From contig DF237100.1 in assembly GCA_000708835.1 (NCBI GenBank), positions 108,628 to 172,627 on the forward strand: 64,000 nucleotides of DNA, given 5' to 3'. The stretch is from Klebsormidium nitens. Taxonomy: Eukaryota; Plantae; Klebsormidiophyceae. Positions 6,135 to 58,033 of this stretch are shown here, in pieces (position 1 is the first letter of the stretch; every line of letters begins with the position of its first letter). A program made the translations under genes and the position numbers. Under the pieces are notes generated by a model that saw nothing but the letters and a program-made list of their open reading frames with translations, made no database searches and was not told where the DNA came from.

Positions 6135-9100
6135 GGTATGGCGCTCTCGAGTGCTGGCTAACAAAACGTGGGGGCAGGGGACTGACGGCGCGATCGTAAA
6201 GCAGGCACACGCTGGAAAGCTGGAAGCTAGGGCGCCTGAAAGCTGGGTTTCTCCAGAGAACTGAAGAATGAGAGATTCTCAGCTCAGATTCGTGCAAAAT
6301 TTTAAATGCAGCTTGCCAGAGCTAGAAATCCCCGTCAGCTTTGCGCATCAGGATCATAGGTAGTATGCTTCAGTCTACAGATGACTTTGGCGCCATATTT
6401 TGCATGGGATCACGTGCTCGCTTGGGCAACCGGCGGCAGTGTACGGCAAGTCAAGAGAGCCAATGGCCGTCCAGATACCCGTCCTTCTCATCGGACGGCT
6501 GCTGAGAGAACCGTGCCTGACGTTTCTGTATGCAAGCACATACTTGACTTGAACGGCCAAGATTGACCCTGCTTATCGGACGGTCGAGACGACCTCGCTT
6601 CAGACCTCTTACTAGGACCTCGCACTCAAGCAAAGTTCAAGTATCGCATTGCGGAACATTGAAGATCAACTGCATAATGGGCTGCACCTGTATTGCACTT
6701 GCGTTACACTCACTCCCACGCCAATGGGAGCTTCGACTATTGTACGTTCGTCATCAAGAGATCGAAGCAGTCCTTGCGCCCAAGCCGGGCCTCTCGTAAT
6801 GTTGCCAGCATCATATACAAGTCATTTTTGATCGTCCTCGTTTGAATGATGAACAAGGAATTTAATTGGCTCATATCCAAGACGACCCGAGCCGCTAACG
6901 TTCATGGATGATAGCAGTGGTTGGCTGTTTGCGCCCGGTGAAATGACCGTCCGGGGCCTGCCACGACGACTATGCGCACATACATGTTGTGCAAATTATG
7001 TTCGATGATTGCAAACCAGCCACAAATATGCAAAACTCCACCGCTGCGACTTGATTTTTCTAGAAGATCGATCACATGCCAATCTGGCTTTTCAAGGCCA
7101 CGCCTGCATTTTTGCAAGTGAGCGTAGAATCTGGGAAAATTGAAGAACGGTCTCGGCTATATATTGTTCTATTGTTCTGAGGAAGAAATGCCGTGCGGGT
7201 AGTCTCGACTTTCACCTCGTTTCGTTCAGACGACACTCAAATGTCCTGCGTGAACGATGGCCACGTGATGACTGATGCGCTCACTGAAATATCAGTGGGC
7301 CCTCACTTGCAACGATTCACGAAAAGCTTGTAGCTTTGCGTAGATATTACTTGTCTGGCTTTGGTTGGATGAACGGAGCGTTTATGCTCAATACATGATA
7401 TTGCGCCTACAGCTGCCATGTTCGCAAAACTCGGATACTGATCATCCACATTTATCATACTCACTTTCTTCCAGAATTGCAAGTGCATATTTTCTTATGA
7501 CGGTTATGCACAATCTGGTCATATAACACTTGAGCTATCTACGGTGGGGGCTATGACGCGTCCCGGTTCCCGTTCCCCGGGGTGTACTGCGGCGGTAGGG
7601 CCCGTCTTCCAACGTGCACGGCGAACTGTCCCAAAGGGCGTCCGAATCGGCATACAAACCGTTGTACGCTGTTCGAGCGTCGTTCGCAACACCTTCGCCT
7701 GGCTCGTCTAGGAACCGGGTGAGAATAATGGTCATGTGAAGCTCTCCCTGCGGGTAAGCAACAAATTCGGATCTCAAAGTAGCAACTTGCTGGTTGTAAA
7801 CAGGGCCGATACAACAGGACCGAAGTTGCACTGGCAATGGCCTAATGACAACCAAAATTTGGAAGCGCTTTCCCAGCGCGCGGTACGGAAGCAATCGTGG
7901 CGCCTCCAAATCTTTGTGTTACCCTTCCTTCGGTATCAGAAGTTATGTGCTTACCTAGCGCCGCCTCTTCTTCAGAATCTCAACGTACAGCCTTTTCAGC
8001 TGACCATTGGTTGTTTCGCCATTCATGATGCTAATCCGTGGAGTTTAGAGACGACAAACGTACCCGGAATTTCTCGTCGATGACCGTTCCGACGATGATG
8101 TCTGCAGCGGGGTGCACGTGACCCGCTACAATCTCCGCAACAGTGGTCATCTGCACAGAGACACAGAGTAGGATCTTCATGGATCTTTCAAATAAAGATC
8201 AATCTTATCATTCTAATCGTTGTAGGTTGCACTGCTAACGAGCATAACTTGAATCTTTGACGAAGCGCTAAGGAGCTGAATGTTCTTATCACCGCTGCGC
8301 TCTTGGGGAGATTCAGACGCAAAAGTCCGTCGAGCACAAGGGAACGCACAGAAATCACAATTTTTCGGCCAAAACGAGCGGCACAATTGGACATCTATCG
8401 TGATGTCCATTTCATTTTATATCAAAAGGCTTGCTTTGCTGGAAATATTCGCGCCCTTACCAGCAACTAAAGTCTGGCTTCTTTGTTACTTAGCCAAAAC
8501 TTCGTCGGCTCTTGTGACGATCCCTCTGTCTCATCGGGTTTAAATCTGCCAGGAAGTACACTTTTCTTCTCAGAGATTGAAACGATGAGAGCGCTTCACC
8601 TCTCGTAAGGTGAGGTCTCTCCCAGATGTCAGGTTGTAGATCACGCCCGTCGGCACGCCCTTGCCCTCCAGGCTCTGCAGCGGCGACCCGAGCGCGCGCG
8701 TCGCGGCGGCGCGCGCGCGGTCCGGGCCGGAGCCCTCGCCGATGCCCAGGATGACGTCACCCGCGTCCTTCATTATAGCCCTGACGTCAGCCAAATCCAC
8801 GTTGACCAGGCCGCGCGTCTGTGGAAGCGGCGTCGAAAAGCCGTCAGGCAGAAGCGCGGAAACTGCTAAATGCAAACGGACTCTAGAATCGGCCGTCACC
8901 GGAACCGCTCGAGTAAGGTCTTTTAAACCACAACAGGCAAACACTTCTCGTCCGCAGTTATCCGATCCTCGCCAAGCACTTTCAAGAAAGCCAGAAAAAA
9001 GTAGGCCGAACGTTTCACTTCGAAGAAGAAAGACAACGTTTCAGAGGCGGGAATATATTAAGAATAGGTAGATTTAGAAGTCCGGCCGAGCTGGACCATA

Positions 9101-9777
9101 AGTAGGGGGATTCGGGTGTGCTCGACGCAGGCACCGGGATGGGAATGCAATCCCTCGAAAAACCAGGGGCAGGGAAGGGCACTTCGCTGCCCAGGAGGAG
9201 CCCGGCGCGGAGAGGGGGGTGAGAGTAGGGGACTGGAGAACCCCCCCGAGACAATACAACGCTTTGTTTAAATGGGCTGCTCTCAACTCAGGGAACATTC
9301 CAAACTGGCAACTGATGAGAATATTATGCCGCTTGCTTGAGCATTCTGAAGAGGAAAGGGTCCGTCACTTACCGTGATGATGTCAGAGATTCCCTGGAAC
9401 CCCTGACGCAGCACCGCGTCGGCCATGCGGAACGCCTCCTCGATAGGAGTCTGTGGACGGAAAATGGGTCGTCAAAACCAATCCTCGACTTGTACTGTGC
9501 TGCAATTTGTTCGTGTTCCTCAATTGGCAGAGAGTTAAGGGAACAATAGGAGATGCCCAAACCAACCATCTGGCTTGTCCTGCTTTGCGGAAAGAACGCC
9601 TCACTTGTACTCTTCTTAAGATCCTCCGGCCGTTGCATGGTACGTGCCATTAAACGAATTGAAATTGACACTTCCTTCTGAAAAGTATAAGGAAGTGACG
9701 GTGTCCGGCAAACCGGGCGCACAAACCTTGTCGGTGATAAGGTCTAGCAGTCGGTCGTTTGGCACCACCACCAGCGC
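1590..9777 (-). repeat. Arm A of a diverged ~8 kb inverted segmental duplication
   Basis: Kinase exons 1-8, its introns and promoter, and FtsZ exons 5-9 recur in the same order, reverse-complemented, at 54595-63100. Boundaries are approximate, from visual alignment. Confidence 0.92.
6375..6600 (-). promoter_or_regulatory. Conserved upstream block of kinase A, with a G-box and ATCGGACGG-like motifs
   Basis: Roughly 80% identical by eye to the reverse complement of 58034-58260. Contains CACGTG near 6411 and ATCGGACGG near 6490 and 6576. Confidence 0.45.
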
Positions 9778-12700
9778 ATCCACGGCCGCGCGCAGCGCCT
9801 CAATACCAGTGCGCACCTGCCAGGGGGGTGGAGAAATACTAGTAAATCAGAAATTGTATCGTTCTTTCTCATCCAAAAGACAGGGGTGCCGGAAGCTTCG
9901 CGATCGGCAATAAACCCTCCTGCCGGTGTTCAATCTGGTTACTGGTACCAGAAAAAGTATCTCGAAGTGAATACGAGTCCAAAGGCTGTGCATTACACCT
10001 TGTTTTGCCTCAGTCGCCCTTCCTGGTATGTTCAAAAAGGCGTATCCGCGTCCGCTTACGATACCTGGCCGCATTTCTGGGTCCGCTGAGCAGAAAGCGT
10101 AAAAAGCGTCAAAAACTTTGGTTCAACTGGTTTACCATAAAGGCGGCACCAGGGGTCCGGAAGCCCCAGAGAAAAGCCTTTTCGAGTCTCTAGATTAGGG
10201 CCAGCTTCCAATCGGGCTTGATATATGAAGTCTCTAAGATTTCGTAGCCAGAAGACAAGTCTGTTGTACGATCTTTGCATCATAATATTTTCTTCAATTC
10301 CTTGCATAAGTTCTCACTCTCAAAGAAAGGGTCAAGCGGCTACAACCCACGTCCAACTATTGAGAGGAAGAAAGAAGCCTCTCCATCAATCTCCTACAGT
10401 TTTCTAAATTCTTTAAGACAAAAGTCGTCGCTTTGTCTCTCAGAAACCTTTTCAAACACCCTGAACTCCGAATCTGCCACAAAGCAAATGTTCCACTTAC
10501 AATTTTGGCGCGCTTGGCTCCTTCAAAAGCGAACGGCTCCGTGACGGTGCCGATCGTCAAGGCCCCCGTTGCTTTTGCTAGTCTGCAGTGGCAGCGAGTA
10601 GATTAGGAACATGCAGTTTGGATGAGGTTTCAAGGTCCTCGTCCCCGCTCACATCAGCAGCCCTTGTACCTATGAGCATCTCATTTTTGGCTGTTTTTCA
10701 TAACCACTCTACCAATCTTCGCCCCCAATATTCCTGATTGGCGCTACGATGTCTACGGATTTCAGATAGCGCTTCCCGCTATCGAAATCCCGACCATCCT
10801 CAGTGAATTCAGCTGTCTTGACCTTCCCGTAAGACTCATCCCCTCGGTACGTACTTGCCGACAATTGGTGCGATGCCGGTGCCGACCCCTCCACCCAGCC
10901 CGGCCGCGATGAAAACTAGATCGGCGCCCTTGACTGCATCCTCCAGCTGCTTGTGGTGCTCCTCCGAAGCCAGCTCGGCCAGCCGGGTGTTGCCGCCGCT
11001 GCCTGCACTCATTAACTCGAGCAAACGCCGAGTTCCCAACAGTTGATACCGCAGAGGATTTTTCAATGTCTGGATTCTGGGCTGGGAATTGGGAGTTCCA
11101 TAACGGTTCCTGAAACGCAAAATTCTCAGGCCGATATTAGATTACGCCTCATCAGTTGATAGTTTCGAAGACTATGTTTCGGTTCAAATATCATTTTTCC
11201 CGGCGAAGTTTTCAAGCGACTGCCCAATGAACAAAGGCTTCTCACTTCGAAGCCAAGAACAGGTTGAGAAATATGAACAGCTGTCAGCGAGCTGGGATGT
11301 AACCTCCAGGCAATCAGGCCGCGTGAGGCAAACGACGCAGTTTATTTCACGAAAACGTTTCCTGTCAAATCATCCGGGAACGTACGGGCAGATTGCCTCA
11401 CCCCCGGGCAGAACAGTGTTTCTGCAAAGGAGCTGAAGCATTGGTGATCATCAGGCGTACCTTTTCCGTGCGTGATGGAGCGCCCGATCTGCATCTTGTG
11501 CTCCGCGTGCGACAGGCGCAGCTGCTGCGCGTCCGTGTTGATCGCCCAGAACGTGACGCCGCCCACGCCGTCTGCGGCATGCAGATGACGTCAGCGATGG
11601 TGTTCAGCGGCAAGGTCTTGACAGCAACGTACAAAAGTAGGGGAGTATTGAGTGGTCTACGCTTCTTTTACCAGCCCGCCGGCGGTCAACTCTCAATATC
11701 AATCTTCGGTACATCTTAAAGCATTCACGTTCTTTCTGGGATACAGTAAAGTATACGAAGGCAGAGGAGTCCTGAAACGCCTCACTCCCTCTCTTGCAAA
11801 ACAGTTTGATGGCCCTGCGAGGGCCCGCAACCATCCGTTCCTCACCTTGAACCATCCTGTCGACAGCATTACAGCCCCCACCGCCGATCCCAATCACTTT
11901 GATAACCGCCCTCCCCGCAAGCGACTCTTCCCGCAACGCCTCCAGATCGCCGCGCGTCTCAAAACCCAAATTTTCAGACCCCTCCCTATGACTTCCGTCG
12001 ACAGACCCGTTCTCTCCTCTAGAGACTTCGCTTCCGCTTGCGATGACTTCCTTTTCGTCGAAACTTTCCTCTAGCGCGGTTTCAATCCCTGCACCAGATT
12101 TCGGGACCCCTTCCGCTTTCTGGGGCGGCGCATCCGGCTGCGGCAAGACGAGCGGGGCGAGGTGGAGCTGTGCAAGTAATGACGTTAGCAAGTGGAGAGC
12201 GCGCGCGTCGTGTTTCAGCGTCTCTGACGTCAGCGCGCTTTCTGTCGCGCGCGCACGCGCTTCGGCTGGCGCCGGTTGACGGATGGACGGCTGACCACTC
12301 GGATTCGCTCCCTTCTCCTCGCCCTCTCCTTTCATCTCTCTATGTGGCTCTTCTTTTCGAACTAGTCCGCCATCTATCTCTGCATTTGCTGTGGATCCGT
12401 TTTCTTCTTCCCGGCTGACTCTTTGAGGCGACGCCGCACTCGCATTAGACTCTCTCTCAGTCGCCTCTACGAAGGCGTTATTCTCCGCTTCCCGGTCATC
12501 GTTACCCGTCCCAGCAGCCTCTATCCCTCCCTCCAAGTCGCTCTCAGGCAGAACCCCATCCGTTTGCGTTTCTGGTTCCAGATCAAGAACCCCCGTCTTC
12601 GACGCCTCATGTAACGCTGAGTCGTCTTTCGAACTAGGCGTTACAGCCTCCCGCCAGGTTTGTCCCAGCTCCGAGCCGCTCAGCTGCGCGTGCAACGGCA

Positions 12701-14066
12701 CGTGCCTGTTTCCCGTCGTTTCATCGTCTTCTCCCGCTTTTCTAGTTTCCTCGGTCGAACTTTGCGCTCCTTGGAAGAGCTCCATAACCTTCGGCGCGTT
12801 CAAAACCTTTGCCTGCGTTTGCATCTGATTCTCCTCACGCAACATTGTGACCTCCGGCTCTCTGGATCGCTCAGGCGCCTGCGTTTCTTCCGGACCAACC
12901 TCCTCGTTCTGTTCGGCCTTCACCCAATTCGACCGTTCTTCAGACCAATTTCCGGTTCTTGAGTTGTTGAGCCCGGTTTTTAACGAATCTGCCCGCCCTG
13001 GTTCTGTAGGGTCAGTCTCGCTTGTTGACATCGGAGCAGAACTACACCGGGCGTCGCGATTCACCAGGGACACAGCCGAGTGGAGCACGACTGACGTCCC
13101 CGGGGCCTTGAACCGGGCAACCGTAAGCTCGCTCTTAGTTTGCATAATAAGAGCAGAAGCGCTCTTCGCCTCTCCACGCACCAGAGCCACCACACTTCTC
13201 TTTGTAGCAACCGGTAACAACAGTCCAACCTCTTGCTGCCGTCCCTCCGGCTTGCTCTGCTTTCCTTCTCCTGACTCTTCCACTGTTCTCGAGTTGGAAG
13301 GAGGCTTGACTGACTCTAAGCGGAGGGTTTTTCCTTTGACGTTTGATCCTGCCCCTCTTGTTGCGGAACTGGACGGGATCTGCAACCGGGCTTCCCTCAG
13401 GTTCTTCTTGTGCTTGACAGACGGGACAGCAGGGGCATGCGTCACCGAATCACGTCGCCCGACCCTTTCTTCATATCCCTTGGCACCCGGGTTCTTGCCT
13501 GGACCTTTCTCCTTTCTGATGTGCCTAATTTCAACTTTTCTAGCGTCTGATTCGACCTCCACCTTTTTCTTTTCAATGTGGTGTCCGCTTCCCGCTCCTG
13601 GTCCCTCTCTGCCTTTAAGACCGCTGCCACGCGCTGTCTCATCCTCATCTCTTCCTTCGCTGACACTTTTCCGTAGCTGCTCGTTCCGTTTCCTTTCTTT
13701 TGATTCCTCATCATCCTCATCTTGCCCTGTTACTCCATTCGTTTCACCCCTCTGCTCACCATCCGTGCGCCTTTCTTCATGCTCCAACTCACCATTCTCT
13801 CCTTTCCGCCTGCCCTTGCTGAGCTCGCGGCGCCTTGCTACTTGCTTTCCACAGTCAAGGTGGCACCTGCCAAGGCCCCATGTCTTTGTTCTTCCATCTG
13901 CTACCGGGCATGCATTGCTGCCCTTTGGAAGGAGGTCAAAGCTCGTACGACTGCGCGGCGTATAGCATGTCTGAAGAGCGATTGAGCAGGACGAAAGCCT
14001 ATTGGCTGAAGGATGACATCCCAAAGGCCCCTCCAGCTTTTGAAAGGCGCATGGGACTGCCGCCAT
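7535..14066 (-). CDS. FtsZ: Divergent plastid-type FtsZ with ~720-aa N-terminal extension (~1082 aa, 9 exons)
   Basis: Exons 14066-11846, 11571-11461, 11002-10855, 10582-10501, 9816-9727, 9450-9373, 8818-8600, 8150-8064 and 7747-7535 total 3249 nt and are in frame. Motifs: IKVIGIGGGGCNAVDRM, FWAINTDAQ, AGLGGGVGTG, TEPFAFEG, DALVVVPNDRLL, GISDII, GLVNVDLADV, GELHMTIILT. Confidence 0.93.
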
Positions 14067-14855: not shown

Positions 14856-17800
14856 ATGTACAAACACCTTCTGACAGAGAATCCCAAAGCGTTGATTACG
14901 ATGGAGAGTCTCTCTGCAACCCCATACTGCACAAAGCTGCACTCAACCCTCCAGAGTGTAAATCAATCTGGCAGCTTCTGTATCTCAAACACGCTGAAGT
15001 CCTTCAGCCTTCCAGGGCTGGAGGTGTCTGCACTCGGCCCGATAAGCATGCCGCTTAATCCCTACCAAGCGCAGCAGCTTGCACAAGCGTGCTTCCCCGC
15101 ACCTTTTGGCCGCAGGTGAGAATTAAGTGTCGCGCGCTCAAATTAGCCCTTGACCTCACCAGGTTGCATTTTCTTCCAGTATTTCACGATCCAATCTTTC
15201 AAAGTGATCTGTCTCTTTTGGCGTTTTTCTACATCTGCTGGTTTAAATAGAGATCTTCTTGGAAGACCTCCGATTGCCTGCACTTGAGGTGCCATTAAGA
15301 CGCCTCATTATTGTTGAATTCTCTGTCATGCTTGCTCCAGAAATGGAAGCAGGCTAAAAATTGACCTCAGGTGACGCAGCGACGCAGATTCAACGAACTG
15401 TCTCAACAGTAAGCCGCTTCCTTTCCTTCTGTAACAGGGACGCAACCATCTATGACGACAGTGTCCGCAAATGCCGGCAGCTTTCCCCCCACGAATTCAG
15501 ACTAGCGGGACTGGATTGGGATTCCCAAGTGCGTCAGCTGGCAAATGAAAGGGTCAAGCGGGACCTTGGCCTCCCAGAGACTCTCACAGTGATTCCAAAA
15601 CTCTACAAGTGCCTCTTATATGAGGCTGGCGACTTTTTTACGAGTCATCGTGACACCGAGAGAGAGGAAGGCATGTTTGCGACCCTGGTCATCGCGCTGC
15701 CCTCCGCACACTCTGGAGGTGAGCAGTTGGAATACAAGCCATCCATTACTCCTATCCTCAAAGATCATCTTTATTTTTGTCTTAATTCTGACCTGGCTTT
15801 TGGTAAGTTTGCGTCTGATCACGTTGCAAGCTTCGAATGGTACTTGCAGCATCTCATTCCGGCTGCTCACAGATTACAAGGGGACCAATCTGCTCGACGA
15901 CCTTGATGTGGATTTCGTTTTGCACCTCGAGACAAGCTTCGTACTTCGGACTAGTTTTCGAAGTGAAATGATTCAAGACGCGTGTACTTCTAGGAGAGCT
16001 TGTGGTTCGCCACGCCGGCCAGGAGATTGTCGTCGACTTCGGCAGCAGAGACCTGTACCAGCTGCACTACGCCGCCTTCTTCGCAGACTGTCAGCACGAG
16101 CTGCGGCCAGTCCGCTCGGGTTACCGCCTGGCGCTTGTCTACAACCTCATCGCTCAGGTATGGCCCTTACAGAGTCACTGACATCAGGAACTTCTTTGTT
16201 CGGACGAGATCCGTCCGCACCAATGTAGAAGGTGACGGACTCAGTTTAGCATGTTCACAGAGATTGAAGAAGATCCAGAAATATACCATGAGATCTGCCA
16301 TGATGCAATATTCAGAACGGGAACCTTGACGGCATGAAAGCCCAAACAGAAGTTTAAGAGGTTGCCTGGGTTTCACGAAATTTCTTGACACCCTGAACTT
16401 GGTCTGAACCAACAATTTGACTAAATTCAGTTCAGATTTAATTTCAGATAAACACTCTCCAAAACCGCGACGTCGGAAGCTGATGAGCAATCGGTAAAAG
16501 TGTCGCATACGTCGAACTTTATGAAAGACAGAAGAATCTTCGTGACGTGGATATGATGAAAACCGCCAGCACATTCTAGTTCAGGAAGAAAGTTGAAAAA
16601 TATAAGAGTAATGTATCGGGCGCCTGACTGACAAAGTTAGCGACTACAGCTTTGTCACCTTATTCGTTTCCTTCCGCTCGACCGCATTCCGTTTTGATGT
16701 TTGTGGTGTATGCAGGGATCCACGCGCGTCCCGCAGCCTGCCAACAACACGGAAGCGGCTGGAGAGATCGTGAAGGCCACCAAAGCTTGGAGCCAAGAAG
16801 AGAGAGGCCCTCAGAAGCTGGTCATCCCTTTGGCACACCAGTACTCGAGCAAGAGCCTGACCTTCGACAGCCTCCGGGGAACGGACATGGCCACCATTGA
16901 CGTCATCTTGCAGGCAGCCAAGGTGCGGAAGACTCAATGTTTCTTGGCTTTTGGTGAAATGAAAAGCACTCGCTCTGAGAAAATGGGGTTATTATGTTCA
17001 AACTTGTCGAACTCCATTTAAATCCATTCGGAGAGAGTAAGTTGTTTCCTTTCAGGGCTGTCTGCTCGCACGCATGTACGTTTCCGCCGCTGGCAATAAT
17101 GGTCGACTCAACACGTCCCCCGGTGCTCTGCATGACGTCACGCTTTTTCATAGGTCAAATTCTCGCAAATATAGGAAATTGTCTCGTCGATTGACCTAAT
17201 AATCGGTGTCGGTCTTGTGATTCAGGCCCCGGGTGCACCTCCCTTTCATTGTTACTTGGGAACATTGGAAAAGTACGAGGACGGTTGGAAAGAATCGTAC
17301 CGGAGGGGCGACGTCACGAGTACGTACACGAAGTTGCGCGACCTGGTGGCTGCTGACGAGGCGGGGCACACGTATGACACGCTCACGTTCAGTCGGAGTG
17401 GTGAGGATCGTTCACTCGGGTCTCGTCAATCGGGGCTGAACAGCTTGTGAACACTAGCATCTTGTAGCCTTCAAATTTGGATGGATTCATGTATGTCACG
17501 AAAGATTGATACCTTGAGTGCCGTTAGGTCATGGATTTGACTCTAAGTGATCCACAGAACGTTAAAGAGAGCCTCACTAGGCAGCAATGTGGCTATCTTT
17601 TCTCTACCTTGTCATCCGCAGCAGACCAACGTTTGACCGACTCTTCTACTTGCAGCTTCGGAAATGCATGCTTGACGCGCTCACCCTCATCCTATTGACA
17701 TTCCTGCAGAGCTCGTCCCAGAGGAAGCTCTGGACAACCGGGGCTGGGCAAGAAGGTGAAGACACCGGGAACGAGGGAGTGAAAGAGGAGCGCTGGTACC

Positions 17801-21487: not shown

Positions 21488-24400
21488 CTACTCGTCCAAC
21501 TCTTTGTTGATCTCCTTGATCAGCTCTTTTCTATATTCCTCGAACGATCCGTCATACCGCGCCACCTTCCCGTGCTCCACTACCCACACCTCGCTCGTCT
21601 CCTCGTCCCCGCACACACGCGAAATGAGCCGCGCGTCGTGGCTCACGAGCACCACTCCCCCACTGAACTCTTCTAGAGCGTCTGCCAAAGCGTCGATGCT
21701 CTGCATGTCCAGATGGTTCGTTGGCTCGTCGAACAACAGTCTGCGGAAGGATCGAGACGGTTAAGCAACCAAAAGGGGAGGCGAACCAGATAGATACAAA
21801 CACTCTGATGAGGAACTTTAGACGCGGGGGCAAGTCAAATAGCAAACTGGCGCAGGCAGAGTTTGGCGGCAAAGGTTTGTGGGCACCAGGAAGGCAAAAG
21901 TCAAACGCAAGGGAACTTAAACCTGGCTGAAACAAACGAGGGAGAAGACGGAGGTAAACAGAGAGAACAAGGACCTCGCAGAGGTGTATGGAGAATAAAG
22001 AAGCCATATCTGCTTCAGAGTACGGGGTGTGTTAAAAGATATAGGGAGGTAGAGTCCAAGAAAACAAGGTAAACGACTGTACTCCTCTACCGCCAGATCG
22101 CAAAGTTACCTTGACTCAAAGCGAAGAGGCTCCTCCAGGCGAAACGACTTTCCCGCCCTTGTTGCTTGCGAACGTGGTTCACCGTTGCCCCTCTTAGACA
22201 AAGTGGGACACAATGAAGAGCACGTTGCCCATCGCTTGGCACTACGGTCACTTAGAAACGGACTCGTCTACTTACATGTGCGGCTGCTTGAGCGATATTG
22301 AGGTGAACACGACGCGCGCCTTCTGGCCGCCCGACAATTTGATGATTGGCGTGAGGTGGTTGTGGCTGGGCAGCCCGAACTTGCCCAGCTTGGCGCGCAT
22401 CGCCTCGCTCTTACTGGGGCCCTCCTGGTCAGGGTACAGCCGCAACAGGTACTGCGCGAAGGAAAAGGAGACGTGAGCTATTGGATAGCCGTTAGGCAGT
22501 TGATTCTCAAATTAGGTATCAATTTCACGGTCAAGGTGGTGTTTGGGATTGGTTTTGAGCACAAAATGAGGTATTGAGCTTCTGCTTACGAGGCGCCGAA
22601 CCGGCTTTCGGGGCCCTCTTAAGCAACCAAACGTCGCGAAATTGCACAAGACAGAAATAACGGGGTATGCAGACCGACGTCGCCGACTTTCGTCTGGAAG
22701 GGGAGGCCGGAAATGCGTCGAGATAGGAGGACTTTATGCACAAAAGCCTTGAATTAAATCCAACGCACGAGCGCAAAGGTATGGGAGGGGAGGTTGGCGC
22801 TTCTGCAAAGCGGCCGATTGCTGCTCCTCTTCACCTGGATAAACAAGCATAAAAAGGCACCAGCAGGGAACCCTCCGCCTGCATGAATCCGAGGACTCAA
22901 TTCAGCACGTTTGCACAGCCCCGCAGCAATACCACCCCAGAGCCCGAAAAGATTCTCACCTTCTGAAGCACCTTTGAACCCAACAGACAAAACTACACAT
23001 ATGAATTCTGGGAGTCTATAATACTTAGGGCCGCTCCCTCACCTGCACGGGGTTCTCGTCCATTGTCAGCAAGTCCACAAAGTGCTGCGAATACCGCCCG
23101 ATGCGCAGCTTCTGACTCCGCCTCGTTTCTCCCTCCGTCGGGTCCAGATCCCCGGCCAGCAGGTTCAGCAGCGTCGACTTCCCCGCCCCGTTGGGCCCAA
23201 TGATCGCCACCCTAGTTCCCATGTCCACCCCCACGTTGACGTCACTCAGCCGGAAGTCCGACCGGTTCGGGTACTCAAAGCTGACGTCAATTATTTGCAG
23301 CAGGGGCGGCGTCAGCAGCGTCGGCTCCGGGAAATGGAACACCACCTCGTAGTCTTTCCACTTCCGGGGGGCTTCCACAGGCGCGTCCTCGTCCCCCCCC
23401 GCCGCGGCGGCGGCCTTGCCTTTACTCTTTTTCTCCCGCTTTTCCTGCGCCATTTTGGCGCGGTCCTTGACCTTATCCTGGCTGGCCTTGCTGCCGCTCG
23501 CTTTGGCGGCCTTAAGCTGCTTGTCGTACTTCTCGTAAAGCTTGTTGTTCTCCGTCCGTTTCTTCTCGTACATGTCGTCGAACGCGTCGAAGTTGCCCCT
23601 GCGGAGAGCCCGCGGGGGAGGCGTCAAGACTCGTGCTTCGAGAAGGCAGTGCTACCAAAAGCACATCGTGTGCTCGGAGAGAAATAGCTAAACTCAAGGG
23701 GTACAGTGCCGAATCTTCAAGGCTTTATCCTACGTTGAACAACTAACACGACCTGATTTTCAAGCCCAGTGGAACAGTAAGTAAGTATCCAGATAATCTT
23801 CACGTCGAAGCAAAGTATCTCCCTAACGAATCAACTATCCAGTCAAGACATGCCAGCGTACCACTCAAGACATTTCCGCCTCTCCAACCTCATGCTGATC
23901 ATCTTTGTTCCCAAAGATGCTGTTTGACCTTTCCTTTAAACCTAGAATAGGGCCCCAGATAGGTTGCGCAAGTGCCCTCAAACGGGAACTCTGGAGAGCA
24001 GGGTTCCAAAACTCTGGCTTTCAGATCTTTTGGGGTTTGCCCCTCACCTGTAGTAGTGCAGCTTGAGATCAAACAGGTGTATAATATCGGTGCAGACGGA
24101 GTTGAGGAAGTCGCGGTCGTGAGACACGACCACGAGCGTCTTCTTCCAGCGCATGAGGTACTCCTCGAGCCACAGCACGGCGCGCAGGTCCAAGTGATTA
24201 GTAGGCTCGTCCAGGAGAAGCAGCGTGGGCTGGATGAAGAGCGCGCGCGCGAGGGAGATGCGCATGCGCCACCCGCCGCTGAAGGACTTGGTGGCTCGGC
24301 CCTGCGATTTTGGGGGAAGAAGAATGTTTGTCAGACGGCGTGGGGTCAAACCTGGAAAGGAAGCGACCATCAGGTTGGATAGTGGTGGCGAGCGTGAATT

Positions 24401-28421: not shown

Positions 28422-30815
28422 ATGTCTGCAGCTGCCGCATTGGTGTCAAAGAGTGGCCCAGCCGTATCGCCCAGCAGCAGTGGTGACAGTGACGTTCCGC
28501 TTGGCACTCAAGCCCTCCAGGCATCTGCCACCAGCAGTGGGGCGAAGGGCGGATCTAAGCCAGGTCCCAAACCGGGCACCAAGTACAAAACACGGGTGTA
28601 CAAGGTCAAACCCGGGCCAAAGCCAAGGGACTCTGACGGCAATGTGATAGAGAAGGCGGAGTACGCACATGGGAATTACCACCGCGAGGTCTTGACAAAG
28701 GGCACCCTGCCCCCGAAAAGTCCGTCCGTGACGCCGTCCCCCGTTGTGAAGCACACCCCAGCCCCGTCTAAGTTCCCCGATGCAGCGGACTTGGATCATA
28801 AGAGGGATACAGACCTGCGGCGGAAGCACGAGGTGGAGCAGGCCAGGCTTGATGGGAAGAAAGTGGCGACCCCGGACGTAAAGCGGCCGTTTTCGAGTGT
28901 TGATGATGTCATCGACCGGTTGCTGCCGTACCATGTTCTGGCCAGCTATGACGCAGATGAGCTAGACCTGGAGCAGTGGCAGCGGGACGGTCAGTTGCCC
29001 TATGAATGAGTTTCGCTGATTGTCTGCTTGATGGTAGAGTTAAAAATTGGAGTATTTCAGAAGCTGGAAAGCCCCCTTCTGAGCATCGCTGGTAAATGAG
29101 AGGCGAAGGTGCCTTCCCAATTCAGCTCGTCAGAAGCGGGGGATAACTAATGCTTTTGTAATTGCTCTTATGTGTGGACACAGAGTGTTATGCAATCCGA
29201 CTTCTCGTGCATGCAACGCTGGAGATATTCAGCTGTCCAAAGCCCAGTCAAGGTGCAATCAAACCTGACTTGCAATTATCAGTGTTTTGGACTTCCGGAG
29301 TTTGACGCTCTGAAATTGAGAAGTGCGCCCGTGAAGCTTAGTGACAATCGGTTCCATCATCGTTAGCCTGTTTCATTCTTTTGGACGCTTCCTGGCTTAT
29401 ATGCCTCCCGGAGACCTTAGGGACCTGGCTACAAGGGAATTATGCCTTGTACATATTGATTATCACAGTGGGTCTGGCAAGGAAAGGACACCTGGATTTG
29501 CCACCTGCGATCTTTCAGCTTATCTGACCCTCCGAAAGGCACCTTATGCACACAGTTGACAGACTGTGTATTGCACCAAGACTGGATGAGATTCAAATTT
29601 GTTCATCAATCAATCTCACGTCTCAACTGATCGGTCGAATCTTCAACAAGCTCGTCTGTGCCCACCTGCTGAATCCCTTGTTCTTGGAGCAGAGGAATAA
29701 AACGAGCACGCTTTGAAACTCGAAGAAACGAGGATTTATGACTATTCTGCAGAGTCGCCGCTGCTGTGCTCGCGCGCACAGGCCTGGAAGGAGCTGCTCA
29801 TCGGACGCGCCGCCGAGTTCTCCACCCAGATGATGCAGCAGGTCGAGCGCTTCAACCGCGTCGTGCGCCGAAAGCTCGCCGGCCACGTACCAGGGGAAGA
29901 AACGCTTTTAGCGGCGAAGCTGTTGATCGAAGATGAACGCGCAAAGCTGGCGGCGGAGAAGAAGCTGCGACAGGAGGAGTTGGACCGGCGGCTCGAGGAG
30001 AAGCGGGCAGAGGAGGAGCGGAGGAGGAAGCAGGCAGAGGAAGCGGAGCGGGTTAGGTTAGAGCAAGAGCGTGTTAAGCAGGAGGAGGAGAGGGTCAAGG
30101 CCGAAGAGGAGAGGGTTAAGAAGGAGGCGGCTGAGAGGAGAGCGGTCGCTGCGGTTGCGGCAGAGGGGTCAGGGGAGTCGGAGGACGAAGGGGGGGAGTC
30201 GCAGTCAGGGGAGAGGGACGGGGAGGGCAACAGTGGGGGTGATGAAGGTGAGCGGTGGTCAAGGGACTCTGTCGTTGTCTTGCACGTCAAGAGCGGACAC
30301 AGAAAAAAATGGTGCCTTCGCAATGTGCTGGCAAGTCTCAAAGTTTCCTACGATTCGGTGCCCTCAGCTGTGTGGAAGTCCGGTTTTGCAACACCTTGAA
30401 ATCCTTGCCGTTGCTTTGATTAACATAGAAATCGCATGGCAGTTAGACCTAGTTCTGGATCAAAGCTTCTAGAAAGCCGAACTCCCCAGCACTGATTGCT
30501 TCAGATGGAGTATTAGCGACAACTGACGGATCGTATCGTCCTCGCTGTTACACAGCGAATTTAAGAGTTCGGAACAAGATTCTCATCTTTGCTTCTTCGA
30601 TTGTCTTCCTTCCAGAGGAAAGCGAGGATTCGGATGGCGCCGGCATCCTGATCAATAAACCATCTCATACAACAGATGGTAGTGAGCTTGTAAACTTCAA
30701 CAATCCTTTCTTGGGGTCCTCTGACTGGACGAAGCAGGGATCAGGTCTGAAAGGAGCGGGATATCCGCTCAAGAGCAGTGATAGTGGCACCCGAACAACA
30801 TCTGGAATAGATTGA
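28422..30815 (+). CDS. GLTSCR1/BICRA-domain protein (plant BRIP1/2-like SWI/SNF subunit), 3 exons
   Basis: Exons 28422-28989, 29753-30247 and 30616-30815 are phase-compatible. PDVKRPFSSVDDVIDRLLPYHV matches the GLTSCR1 core, and SRAQAW...AAEF...QVERFN...EE.L....L..ER resembles the plant BRIP proteins. A coiled-coil, E/K-rich tail follows. Confidence 0.82.
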
Positions 30816-54594: not shown

Positions 54595-57013
54595 GCGCTG
54601 GTGGTGGTGCCGAACGACCAACTGCTGGAGTGTAATACTGACAATCAGGTCATGCACCCGGCTCTCCTGACACCAATTTTGCTTCTGGCTGAAGCACTGG
54701 AGATCTGCATATGTTGTGTCAATAGCCCAAGGTTTCAGCCGCTAGTGACTGACATCAGATGAGGCGTGATCACGACTCAAGCTCACAAAAAGGCGTATAA
54801 GTCTTGGCTGATTCGCTGACTGGCCGCTTCGCAGTTGATCAATAGGATATCGGACGTGTAGTTTCATAGCTCTGGCGGAGCATGCACTTCAAGGAGCATG
54901 TTATGGCAAGAAGCTTCTGCCTTTCAAAGGTCGAAATCGAAAGAGCCGCACCGGTGCCAAAAGAGCCCAAGCAACAAGGTGATGTTGCACATGTGAAGGA
55001 AATTCGATGTCGGAACCACGCAGTCATCTTTTCGTGCGCAGACCCTCACAGATAGAGGAGGCATTCTGCATTTGGCGACGGATGCTGCAACAAAAGGTCC
55101 ACACGAAGAGCGGCGGACCCTCCCCCTCCCCAGAATGCTCACGCGAGCGCGATTGATCTACCCGGCCCTCAGGTATAATTTTCAGATTATCAGCAGCGCT
55201 TCCACTCGAAGCGTCATTTCGTCGGGGGTCTTCAGCTCCTCACTCTAACCCTGCCCTCGACCGTGCCGCGCTCCTCCTGGGGGCCGCTTTAGTGCCATAA
55301 CCTGCCTCCACTTTTTCGGCCGCGGGTAGCTCGAGATCCCTTTTTGAATTCATGTCTAGGCCACACCCGATCCTTGCAGCACCTAGAGATTGTCCACCTC
55401 GGTCGGACCTTCCTGCCAGTGAACTTGTTCTTGCCGGTATGTCTGCCCAACTTTCAAACGTTTGAAACTTCTACTGAAGAGAGAGTTGCGACAGACCCCT
55501 TTCTGGTCTTTGTTAAATGCTGACCAGGATCGAACTACTGAGACCAGTAAAGGTTTTCGCAGGCTTAAATCTCAAATCAAAGTCCATTTGAGCTAAGATT
55601 CGCGGCGCTGGGACGCTAGAAGATCCTCGCTCTTGATTGTTGTCGCTCTTTTGCTCACGTTCTTCCGCCCCCTCCCTAAATTACGGGCGGCCTCGTGAAA
55701 GGGGACTTGAACGAGCTGACGTCGGGGCCATCATGAAAGACGCGGGTGACGCTATCTGGAGATCGATATCGGCGAGGGCTCTGGCCCAGACGCGCGCGCA
55801 CGGGAGCAACGGGCGCGCTCGGCTCGCCGCTGCAGAGCCTGGACGCCGACGGGCGTGAACTACAACCTGACGTCAGGAAGCGACCTCACGTTGCAAGAGG
55901 TGAGGCGCTCTTACCGTTTCGATCTGTGCTGCGTGGGAAGGTTTTGAGAAGGGGACCATACTTTTCGGCATATTGTAAACTTGATGAAAGAGACTGAGAG
56001 GTCGTCACAAGGGCCGACGAAGTTTTGGCCGAATACCATAAGGGCCATATCTTAGCTGATGGTCATGGGCGCGAACCCTTCTAGTATAGCAAGCCTTCTG
56101 ACACAAGATGAAGTAGCTTCACGGTAGGTGTCTCATTGTGACGCTCGTTTGACCGATAATCAAAGAAGGGTTTCTGTGCATTCCCTTGTTCTCCGCGGTC
56201 GTTTGCTTTCTGATTTTCTGTCAAGGGCGTTGCGATGCCCGTTAAAAATTAGCTTCTCAGCGCTTATTTGCAAAATCCCAGGTATGCCCGTTGATAGTAC
56301 TGTGAACATGGAAAGGTTTTTATTTGGCATGCTGAATTACTTTTAGTCCTTGACTCTCTGGCATCACGTTACAAGCCTCCGCAAACCAACCGTAGATCAT
56401 TTTGGGAAGATTCACCACTTAAGCGACTAAAAAACATCCTACTCAGTGCAGATGGCCACGGTTGCAGTAACCGTAGCGGATCACGTGCACCCCGCTCCGA
56501 ATATCATCATCGCAACGGTTTTCAACGACAACTTTCGGGTTGGTCCGTCGTTCCAGAAGTCCACAAATATGAATACAATCAGTGGTTGCCTGGTTGAGAA
56601 GCTTTCTGTCGAGACTCTGACGGAGAGGCGACGCTAGGTGAGCACCTGATTGATTACCTAGAGGACGAGTGACACACAAATTCGAAAGCGCCCCGAGTGC
56701 TTCTGTACCAAGGCGCTTGGGAATCGCTTCCAGATTTGTATGTCTACTAGGCTTTTGTCAGTGCGACTTCGGTCCTCTTATACCGACCATTTACGGCCCG
56801 CAAGTTCCTGCTCTGGGATTTGAGACTGTTGCTTACCTGCAGGGAAAGCTTCGCATAACAACCACATTCCTCACCGGATTCCGAGACGAGCCAGGCGAAA
56901 GTGTTGCGGACGACGCTCGAACAGCGTACAAGGGTTTGTACGCCGAATTGGACGCCTTGTGGGACAATTCCGCGTGCACGTTGGAGAATGGGCCCTACCG
57001 CCGCCGCAATTAA
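54595..57013 (+). pseudogene. FtsZ: Decayed 5'-truncated FtsZ copy (remnants of exons 5-9)
   Basis: Remnants: ALVVVPNDQLL (54595), EEAF (~55055), a frameshifted ADVGAIMKDAG...GSPLQSL...YNLTSG.DLTLQE (55700-55900), HVHPAPNII (56450-56535) and GKLRITTTFLTGFRDEPG (56843-57013). Exons 1-4 were not found. Confidence 0.9.
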
Positions 57014-58033
57014 CCCTGGAGTACGGGAACCGGACGCGTTCCTGGCCCATACGGTTACATATCAGACAACCAGATATTGTGTAGATACCATTTAGGGGGA
57101 AATTGGCACTTGCGCTTTTGAAGAAAGCGAGCATGGTCAGATTCGACCTTGTCGCGAACATGGCGGCTGGTAGGTGCCTAGTTAAAGTGATGGATATAGA
57201 ATCTTGTCATTCCTGTCTGTTTGCGTGCCATATGATTGATCGATGGCCCGCCTTGCGAGTGCAGTCTTTGCAGATGAGGCCTAGCAATATACCGTAACGT
57301 TGCAAGTGAGGGCTTCAACCCACACTGCCACTTACAATTCAGTGGGCGCTGTCTCCAACTACATTGTCTACGCAGGACGTCAATGCGCCCGATTCATCTC
57401 CACGAACCGCATGTCCAACGAGGTGCATTACTCCCATATGACTCATGAAGCGCGGCCTTGAGGCCTTACTGGAGATCCGAGGTTGTTTATGTTCTCGATC
57501 CTCTAGAGCACAAGTCACTCAGTGGAGGTGTAGCACAATGTCTCGAAGGTTTCAGGTCAAACCTTTGTTAGAATCTGTAATAATCTAACAACGTATGCAA
57601 GTCTCAAGCACATGTATGCCACGCTCAAGTCACCACTAAATGCCAAAGCTCTGTCATCTGGACACTCGCCTTGCGCTCGGTGATCGTCTCTGATTTTGAG
57701 CAGACTACATTCTTCACATTGATCAAATCTAAGGGCAGCTCCGAGCTTAGAGTCTCGGCAACGTTTGTATTGTGCCGCAACTTTGAGACAGGCTCGGTGC
57801 TCCACCGTACATTTAGACTCCGCTTCACAAAAATGCCGGCCGCCGACAACTGCCCGCGGACGATGGGACGGATATCACCCAGACAATTTCCCATTGGCAT
57901 GCTACTTTGGATGTAGGTACAAAATAATTGCAACTCGACGTTAGGTTGCGGGACTTCTTGCTAGCAGAGAGCACAAATCCCTTATGTCCGCGAGGACACT
58001 GGTTGATCACCCACGAAAAAAAACCTATAAACC

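What the first reader, a model, noticed from the sequence alone, without database searches (positions are those of the whole stretch)
7535..14066. Giant FtsZ with ~720-aa N-terminal extension and an altered tubulin signature
Seen: a 2.2-kb stop-free first exon (transit-peptide-like start, then charged E/K/R/S low-complexity sequence) is fused in frame to a complete FtsZ fold, giving ~1082 aa. The signature is GGGVGTG rather than GGGTG(T/S)G. Other changes are GKGSGGNT for GLG(A/T)GGNP, NVDLAD for NxDFAD and TRF for TGF, and there is no FtsZ2-type C-terminal core peptide. Established: plastid FtsZs are about 400-500 aa, and the replaced Thr (E. coli T108) contacts GTP phosphates. Inference: a specialised, possibly GTPase-impaired FtsZ acting as scaffold or regulator rather than a standard division ring. 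This is the strongest candidate for novel biology here.
Basis: partly seen in the sequence, partly recalled or inferred. Interest (0 to 1): 0.72.

Follow-up and report, generated by a model that had tools for sequence, protein, structure and literature searches.

The report
Giant divergent FtsZ3 of Klebsormidium
This alga's copy of the chloroplast-division protein FtsZ3 carries about 640 extra, probably floppy, residues at its front and a unique change in its GTP-binding signature, so it is an odd member of a known family, not a new kind of protein.

Summary
A nine-exon gene on the minus strand (7535-14066) encodes a 1082-aa protein. It is identical to the GenBank entry "plastid division protein FtsZ [Klebsormidium nitens]".

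**Extension.** Exon 1 is a 2.2-kb stop-free ORF. It has a transit-peptide-like start followed by about 640 charged residues that are predicted to be disordered. It runs without a break into a complete FtsZ fold.

**Family.** A tree places the protein inside the FtsZ3 clade (support 99/95) with Physcomitrium FtsZ3, at the position expected for this species. Its branch is about seven times the median length.

**Which oddities are special.**
- GKG in place of GLG, and the missing Pro, are FtsZ3 family traits.
- Unique to this protein are GGGVGTG (V against T in 421 other signatures), NVDLAD, P203R, G314R, the loss of the VP(D/E)FLRR tail peptide that other FtsZ3s keep, and the extension itself. 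Other FtsZ3s have 91-156 residues before the core.

**Is it functional?** The T7 catalytic residues are intact. Comparison with a decayed duplicate 42 kb away shows purifying selection on the 3' exons.

**GTPase.** E. coli FtsZ T108A loses GTPase activity yet still forms static rings, so impaired GTPase is plausible here but untested.

**Gaps.** I could obtain no RNA reads, so translation of the extension rests on ORF statistics alone. The scan's notes list this finding only for this stretch.

The parts
13827..14066 (-). Exon 1, aa 1-80: transit-peptide-like N-terminus (net charge +8, few acidic residues). The first ATG follows an in-frame stop about 100 nt upstream.
11907..13826 (-). Exon 1, aa 81-720: lineage-specific charged extension predicted to be disordered, with no homologue found. 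It contains a Leu-rich helix at about aa 622-632.
11846..11906 (-). Exon 1, aa 721-740: start of the FtsZ core (T1 loop, GIGGGGCNAV). Phase-1 GT donor at 11845.
11461..11571 (-). Exon 2 (T2 loop NTD, and the GKG of the T3 region).
10855..11002 (-). Exon 3 (T3 SGGNT, and the T4 signature GGGVGTG).
10884..10886 (-). Codon GTC = V817 at the E. coli T108 position. Unique among all FtsZ proteins examined.
10501..10582 (-). Exon 4 (T5, VTEPFAFEG).
9727..9816 (-). Exon 5 (T6, VPNDRL).
9373..9450 (-). Exon 6 (helix H7). D895 is kept at the E. coli N186 column. A896 replaces the conserved Asp at the E. coli D187 column.
8600..8818 (-). Exon 7 (T7 loop NVDLAD with N, D and D kept, L919 replacing Phe, R912 replacing Pro; first part of FtsZ_C).
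8064..8150 (-). Exon 8 (FtsZ_C).
7535..7747 (-). Exon 9 plus the stop codon: last core strand (ILTRF) and a 58-aa tail without the VP(D/E)FLRR peptide.
54595..57052 (+). Decayed, inverted partial duplicate of exons 5-9 with their introns (71-75% DNA identity, stops and frameshifts). Used here as a neutral comparator.

Best explanation
This is the single FtsZ3 orthologue found for Klebsormidium nitens. It is a functional nuclear gene for a plastid-division FtsZ, and it has diverged unusually fast.

Shown:
- It sits inside the FtsZ3 clade at the position expected from the species tree.
- It has a complete, confidently folded FtsZ core with the T7 catalytic residues and nearly all nucleotide contacts intact.
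- Its 3' exons have been under purifying selection.

Inferred from ORF statistics:
- About 640 residues of charged, disordered sequence have grown inside exon 1, between a transit-peptide-like N-terminus and the conserved SLAGRA-IKV start of the core. They are translated as part of a 1082-aa precursor.

Inferred mechanism:
- The protein still co-assembles head to tail with FtsZ1 and FtsZ2, because its T7 loop and polymer interfaces are largely kept.
- The Thr-to-Val change in the GGGTG phosphate loop slows or abolishes hydrolysis at its own nucleotide site, so subunits it contributes turn over slowly.
- Having lost the C-terminal peptide that tethers other FtsZs to partners such as ARC6, it would reach the ring only through co-polymerisation. 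The long disordered arm may act as a spacer or a new docking surface.
- K. nitens keeps ordinary FtsZ1 and FtsZ2 genes, which would allow FtsZ3 to specialise.
For: Identity with the annotated 1082-aa protein and nine GT-AG exons. Careful tree: FtsZ3 clade 99/95, branching order Mesostigma, Klebsormidium, Spirogloea, land plants, with P. patens FtsZ3 (Q70ZZ6) inside the clade. Family-specific residues are shared. No second K. nitens FtsZ3 appeared in a clade-profile search. FtsZ1 and FtsZ2 of K. nitens are listed in the supplement of PMC11285052. AF2: core pLDDT 80-98, aa 1-704 mostly below 50; Foldseek TM 0.90-0.97 to solved FtsZ structures. Extension: 0 stops against 21 and 42; period-3 power 9.9 against a shuffle maximum of 2.8 and 0.2-1.4 for introns; GC by codon position 0.63/0.50/0.56. 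Selection: divergence from the decayed duplicate is 0.13 and 0.12 at codon positions 1 and 2, against 0.28 at position 3 and 0.24 in introns. T108V is unique, 1 against 421. E. coli T108A has almost no GTPase activity and forms static rings (PMC5979038). The tail peptide is present in the other FtsZ3 proteins checked, apart from a Riccia model that appears aberrant at its C-terminus, and absent here.
Against: The extension has no homologue anywhere, so its age and constraint are unknown. Its GC3 (0.56) is well below that of the core exons (0.75), and its first 360 codons show only weak periodicity. Low pLDDT is expected for any orphan sequence without alignment depth. Val is isosteric with Thr, so its effect may be milder than that of Ala. 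The long branch and 15 unique changes at near-invariant sites could reflect partly relaxed constraint. The selection test covers only exons 5-9 (the aligned coding columns are mostly in exons 7-9).
Confidence: 0.55

Rival explanations
1. Ordinary-sized FtsZ3 from an internal start. Transcription or translation begins inside exon 1, for example at Met578, which would give 505 aa and match the 445-511 aa of other FtsZ3s. The upstream ORF would then be a leader that contributes little or no protein.
For: Met578 lies 143 aa before the core, close to the 91-156 aa seen in relatives. The extension has lower GC3 than the core, and its first 360 codons have period-3 power within or near the shuffle range. 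No homologue of the extension was found.
Against: There are 720 in-frame codons without a stop, against 21 and 42 stops in the other sense frames (7 and 22 in the first 359 codons). The sequence after Met578 starts acidic and is unlike a transit peptide, whereas aa 1-80 look like one. The nearest upstream gene is divergent and 835 bp away, which leaves room for a promoter upstream of the ATG at 14066.
Confidence: 0.15
2. A fully GTPase-competent, ordinary ring subunit. The Val, Leu and other replacements are tolerated neutral or compensated changes, and the extension is only a long linker without a special role.
For: All T1-T6 contacts other than T108, and T7 N207/D209/D212, are retained. Val is isosteric with Thr. 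The core folds with high confidence. Mesostigma FtsZ3 also carries a large disordered insertion and many unique changes, so this family tolerates such drift in algae.
Against: Thr at this position is invariant in 421 other signatures, and its replacement by Ala in E. coli removes GTPase activity. The partner-binding tail peptide is lost as well.
Confidence: 0.2
3. A gene drifting towards loss. With FtsZ1, FtsZ2 and other FtsZ-like genes present, FtsZ3 is under relaxed constraint. The long ORF and odd residues would be the early stages of decay.
For: End branch 3.06 against a median of 0.41. There are 15 unique changes at near-invariant columns. The tail peptide is lost. A dead duplicate lies nearby.
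Against: All nine exons are open and every splice site is canonical. Codon positions 1 and 2 diverge half as fast as position 3 and introns when compared with the dead copy. The core exons have GC3 of 0.75. The catalytic residues are intact.
Confidence: 0.1

Closest known systems
FtsZ3 of Physcomitrium patens (UniProt Q70ZZ6) and its orthologues in bryophytes, lycophytes and streptophyte algae
   Same: Same clade (99/95). Shared family residues: GGGGCNAV, G(K/R)G, no Pro after the T3 glycines, VTEPF. Similar post-core length, 58 aa against 49-54 aa.
   Different: Pre-core length is 721 aa against 91-156 aa. V replaces T in the signature. F210L, P203R and G314R are unique. There is no VP(D/E)FLRR tail peptide. 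The branch is about seven times longer.
ARC3 (an FtsZ-derived plastid-division regulator with MORN repeats)
   Same: It is a precedent for an FtsZ-family protein in the green lineage that regulates the Z ring rather than building it (PMC8964177).
   Different: This protein has no MORN domain and a complete FtsZ_C domain with an intact T7 loop. It groups with FtsZ3. An earlier scan note places ARC3 elsewhere in this genome.
E. coli FtsZ T108A laboratory mutant
   Same: A change at the same signature Thr. The mutant polymerises into rings but has almost no GTPase activity and does not treadmill (PMC5979038).
   Different: That is an engineered Ala in a bacterial protein. Here the change is a natural Val in a plastid FtsZ3 and has not been assayed.
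FtsZs with long disordered segments or N-terminal peptides: Mesostigma FtsZ3 (643 aa), the Nostocales FtsZ N-terminal peptide, and a bacterial metagenome FtsZ of 856 aa
   Same: Each has extra, apparently unstructured sequence attached to a normal core. Mesostigma has about 200 extra residues in the C-terminal linker. P0252 has about 400 residues before the core and sits next to ftsA. The Anabaena N-terminal peptide (aa 2-51 deleted in the study) is required for normal polymerisation (PMC6175996).
   Different: None of these is homologous to this extension, and none combines it with a changed signature and a lost tail peptide.

Membership tests
FtsZ (tubulin/FtsZ superfamily) | Tubulin/FtsZ GTPase domain followed by the FtsZ_C domain, with the FtsZ fold | tested here: met
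   Pfam PF00091 and PF12327 match the exons and the whole protein. PDB FtsZ chains match by sequence. The AF2 core matches solved FtsZ structures at TM 0.90-0.97.
FtsZ (tubulin/FtsZ superfamily) | Signature GGGTG(T/S)G in loop T4 | tested here: not met
   The sequence is GGGVGTG. It is the only V against 421 T.
FtsZ (tubulin/FtsZ superfamily) | T7 synergy-loop residues (E. coli N207, D209, D212) | tested here: met
   N916, D918 and D921 are retained. Only F210 is replaced, by Leu.
FtsZ3 (streptophyte algae, bryophytes, lycophytes) | Groups with P. patens FtsZ3 to the exclusion of FtsZ1, FtsZ2 and cyanobacterial FtsZ | tested here: met
   IQ-TREE with LG+C20: clade support 99/95, species-tree order inside the clade. 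FastTree gave 98.
FtsZ3 (streptophyte algae, bryophytes, lycophytes) | Residues shared by the clade in my alignments (my own reading, not a published definition): Cys in GGGGCNAV, Lys or Arg in G-x-G before T3, no Pro at E. coli position 74, Glu (Gln in Selaginella) at position 133 | tested here: met
FtsZ3 (streptophyte algae, bryophytes, lycophytes) | C-terminal conserved peptide VP(D/E/S/N)(F/V/I)L(R/K)(R/K) | tested here: not met
   Absent here, and no such motif occurs in any sense frame of 6500-8100. Present in Physcomitrium, Ceratodon, Sphagnum, Marchantia, Selaginella, Spirogloea and Mesostigma.
FtsZ3 (streptophyte algae, bryophytes, lycophytes) | Dual plastid and cytosolic localisation and a plastid-shape phenotype, as reported for P. 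patens | not testable with these tools
   Known only from the literature (PMC10030945).
ARC3 | FtsZ-like domain joined to C-terminal MORN repeats | tested here: not met
   No MORN hit in Pfam. The protein lies in the FtsZ3 clade.

The most novel reading that the evidence does not exclude
This would be a natural FtsZ that no longer hydrolyses GTP and has no tether peptide. Its 640-residue disordered arm would replace the lost C-terminal tether. It would build a static or condensate-like scaffold that sets where and when the single chloroplast of Klebsormidium divides. That would make it the first natural slow-turnover FtsZ polymer subunit described in a plastid.
Probability: 0.2. Interest if true: 0.65.

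Novelty: new variant of a known kind. Interest (0 to 1): 0.45.

Why it matters
FtsZ3 is the least studied plastid FtsZ. [quoted passage not shown] A natural FtsZ3 that keeps its catalytic T7 loop but has changed the invariant signature Thr, dropped the partner-binding tail and gained a very long disordered arm is a ready-made natural experiment. It could show which FtsZ3 features are dispensable. It could also show how hydrolysis rate and tethering shape the division ring in an alga with one chloroplast per cell. It also warns that presence/absence tables listing "FtsZ3 present" in Klebsormidium hide a strongly modified protein.

Tried and rejected

2. Homologues of the extension. These all gave nothing or no usable hit: the word search with exon 1 returned only itself; in the exhaustive phmmer search every listed non-self match falls in the FtsZ core (one alignment starts at aa 530); the ESM Atlas gave no usable hit; Pfam found nothing; Tandem Repeats Finder found nothing. 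The phmmer list shows only the best 150 hits, so weak hits confined to the extension could be hidden.

3. The 840-aa Closterium hit. It looked like a giant orthologue but is two FtsZ domains in tandem.

4. A lost guanine contact. I first suspected that A896 removes the guanine-contacting Asp. I rejected this. By the numbering table in PMC8456036, the changed column is E. coli D187 = S. aureus N188, an interdomain-cleft residue. From memory, the guanine contact is S. aureus D187, the neighbouring column (E. coli N186), which is kept as D895.

5. Grosche and Rensing 2017, the paper that defined FtsZ3, is not held. I could not see whether it comments on this protein's length.

I used the stored database protein P0001 and checked each exon and each split codon separately.
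Full report
**What is there**

The feature is a gene on the minus strand. ORF listing shows a single open frame from 14165 down to 11604. Its first ATG is at 14066, and its end carries the first FtsZ motif, IKVIGIGGGGCNAV. Short ORFs further downstream carry the remaining FtsZ motifs.

Pfam finds Tubulin/FtsZ and FtsZ_C on these pieces. Sequence searches of the PDB return only FtsZ chains.

A word search with exon 1 found one protein, P0001. It is 1082 aa, 100% identical, and named by NCBI "plastid division protein FtsZ [Klebsormidium nitens]". It sits on scaffold DF237100.1 of assembly GCA_000708835.1.

I used P0001 as the reference and checked each exon and each split codon separately. This gives nine exons:
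- 14066-11846
- 11571-11461
- 11002-10855
- 10582-10501
- 9816-9727
- 9450-9373
- 8818-8600
- 8150-8064
- 7747-7538, with the stop codon running to 7535

All eight introns are GT-AG.

**Is the extension coding?**

Statistics on the extension (the first 720 codons of exon 1):

| Measure | Extension | Comparison |
|---|---|---|
| Stops in frame | 0 in 720 codons | 21 and 42 in the other two sense frames; 9-25 in antisense frames |
| Longest open run | 740 codons (all of exon 1) | at most 205 in 2000 composition-preserving shuffles |
| Period-3 power | 9.9 | shuffle maximum 2.8; introns 0.2-1.4 |
| GC by codon position | 0.63 / 0.50 / 0.56 | introns flat at about 0.48; FtsZ exons 0.67 / 0.49 / 0.75 |

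The frame has therefore been kept open by selection. Its codon bias is weaker than that of the core, and the first 360 codons have only marginal periodicity.

The nearest upstream gene is divergent, and its coding range ends 835 bp from the ATG. The extension does not overlap another annotated gene.

There are no tandem repeats, and no homologue of the extension was detected.

The composition divides into segments:
- aa 1-80 are basic, rich in hydroxylated residues and poor in acidic ones, like a transit peptide.
- aa 81-280 are about half charged.
- aa 360-720 are mostly acidic, with one Leu-rich helix near aa 622-632.

AlphaFold2 gives pLDDT below 50 for almost all of aa 1-704, with three short helices. 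The core, aa 720-1029, scores 80-98. The low confidence partly reflects the lack of any aligned sequence for the extension.

Transcription and translation of the extension remain inferred.

**What family is it?**

An exhaustive phmmer search of 1.84 billion representatives gave no close relative. The best non-self hits are 50-54% identical, and every listed match falls in the FtsZ core (one alignment starts at aa 530). The top hit, an 840-aa Closterium protein, is two FtsZ domains in tandem and does not share the extension.

Cluster look-ups named the neighbours. One of them is UniProt Q70ZZ6, "Putative plastid division protein FtsZ3" of Physcomitrium patens.

A careful IQ-TREE analysis (LG+C20, 35 rows, E. 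coli as outgroup) places the Klebsormidium protein inside the FtsZ3 clade with support 99/95. The branching order is Mesostigma, Klebsormidium, Spirogloea, then land plants, which matches the species tree. FtsZ1, FtsZ2, Cyanophora and cyanobacterial sequences fall outside.

Its end branch is 3.06 substitutions per site, against a median of 0.41.

A search with a profile of the clade found further FtsZ3s (Marchantia, Diphasiastrum, Ceratodon) but no second Klebsormidium member. The search scores at most 8000 word-sharing candidates of 245-779 aa, so this is not proof of absence.

Klebsormidium also has ordinary FtsZ1 (GAQ85535.1) and FtsZ2 genes, listed in the supplement of PMC11285052.

[quoted passage not shown] In moss it is located in both plastid and cytosol, and it is the least studied FtsZ (PMC10030945; PMC8964177).

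**Which oddities are special?**

I aligned the protein with E. coli FtsZ, taken from the annotated K-12 record, so that E. coli numbering could be used.

Family-wide FtsZ3 traits:
- Cys in GGGGCNAV
- Lys or Arg in the G-x-G before loop T3
- no Pro at E. coli position 74
- Glu at position 133 (Gln in Selaginella)

Unique to Klebsormidium at columns where all, or all but one, of 33 other rows agree are 15 changes. They include T108V, F210L, P203R, V193F, M104L, G77A, A81S and G314R. In addition, E. coli D187 is replaced by Ala, where 31 of 33 other rows have Asp.

The codon, GTC, is two changes from any Thr codon.

Retained residues are G19-G22, N24, N43, D45, G71, G105-G107, G109, G111, F135, E138, R142, N165, D166, F182 and the T7 residues N207, D209 and D212.

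I first thought the D187 change removed a guanine contact. The numbering table in PMC8456036 shows that E. coli D187 equals S. aureus N188 in the interdomain cleft. From memory, the guanine contact is S. aureus D187, the neighbouring column (E. coli N186). That column is kept here as D895.

Other FtsZ3 proteins have 91-156 residues before the core and a VP(D/E)FLRR-type peptide near the C-terminus. Riccia, whose model looks aberrant at its C-terminus, is the exception. The Klebsormidium tail has a similar length (58 aa) but lacks the peptide, and no such motif lies in any sense frame nearby.

**Is the gene alive?**

A decayed partial copy of exons 5-9 with their introns lies inverted at 54595-57052. 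It is 71-75% identical at the DNA level and holds stops and frameshifts.

Against this copy, the gene differs as follows:
- 13% of first codon positions
- 12% of second codon positions
- 28% of third codon positions
- 24% of intron positions

This is the pattern expected if the gene has stayed under purifying selection while the copy drifted. The copy shares Klebsormidium-specific residues such as KDAGD and GEGSGPD, and it shares the odd tail (62% amino-acid identity). Much of the divergence therefore predates the duplication.

**Mechanism**

Shown: a well-folded FtsZ3 core with intact polymer-catalytic residues, one unique change in the phosphate loop, and a lost tail peptide.

From the literature: E. 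coli FtsZ T108A has almost no GTPase activity yet assembles rings that do not treadmill or turn over (PMC5979038).

Inferred:
- The protein co-assembles with FtsZ1 and FtsZ2.
- It hydrolyses GTP slowly at its own site.
- It cannot be tethered through the usual C-terminal peptide.
- It carries a long disordered arm that may space filaments or dock new partners.

Three rivals remain open: an internal start giving a protein of about 505 aa, a normal GTPase with neutral drift, or a gene in early decay. Each is weighed in the Rival explanations section.

**Novelty and score**

The protein is already in GenBank and belongs to a described family. I found no paper that describes its size, signature change or lost tail. 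The founding FtsZ3 paper is not held in the library.

Long extra segments on FtsZ are not unheard of:
- Mesostigma FtsZ3 has about 200 extra residues in its C-terminal linker.
- A bacterial metagenome FtsZ has about 400 residues before its core.

I rate this a new variant of a known kind, with moderate interest.

Earlier scan notes say the same genome also holds ARC3 and another FtsZ paralogue with a dismantled GTP pocket. I did not check those notes.

Noticed in passing
window 54595-57052 (+): An inverted, decayed partial duplicate of exons 5-9 of this FtsZ3 gene with its introns. It is 71-75% identical at the DNA level, with in-frame stops and frameshifts, and has no trace of exons 1-4 or the extension.
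   Followed up: partly
P0122 and its cluster members P0271-P0274 (Closterium spp., 729-861 aa): Proteins predicted in several Closterium genomes; in P0122 (840 aa), the one checked, two complete FtsZ2-clade domains stand in tandem in one polypeptide. This is either a real tandem-domain FtsZ or a repeated fusion of neighbouring gene models.
   Followed up: partly
P0129 (Mesostigma viride FtsZ3, 643 aa): This protein has about 200 extra residues between the core and a retained VPEFLRR peptide, and 13 unique changes at near-invariant columns. Early-branching streptophyte algae seem to tolerate large changes in FtsZ3.
   Followed up: partly
L002:2001-4571 (P0252, bacterial metagenome assembly GCA_965332725.1); P0209: P0252 is a bacterial FtsZ of 856 aa with about 400 residues before the core, encoded directly after ftsA. 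P0209 (757 aa) carries a caspase-like Peptidase_C14 domain in front of a full FtsZ.
   Followed up: partly
window about 14901-17450 (+): A divergently oriented neighbour gene (363 aa, weak 2OG-Fe(II) oxygenase hit). Its coding range ends 835 bp from the FtsZ3 start codon, which suggests a shared bidirectional promoter region.
   Followed up: no
window 28422-30399 (+) and 23025-23627 (-): ORFs with GLTSCR1 and TAF4-like matches, and an ABC-transporter ATPase exon. These look like ordinary neighbouring genes.
   Followed up: no
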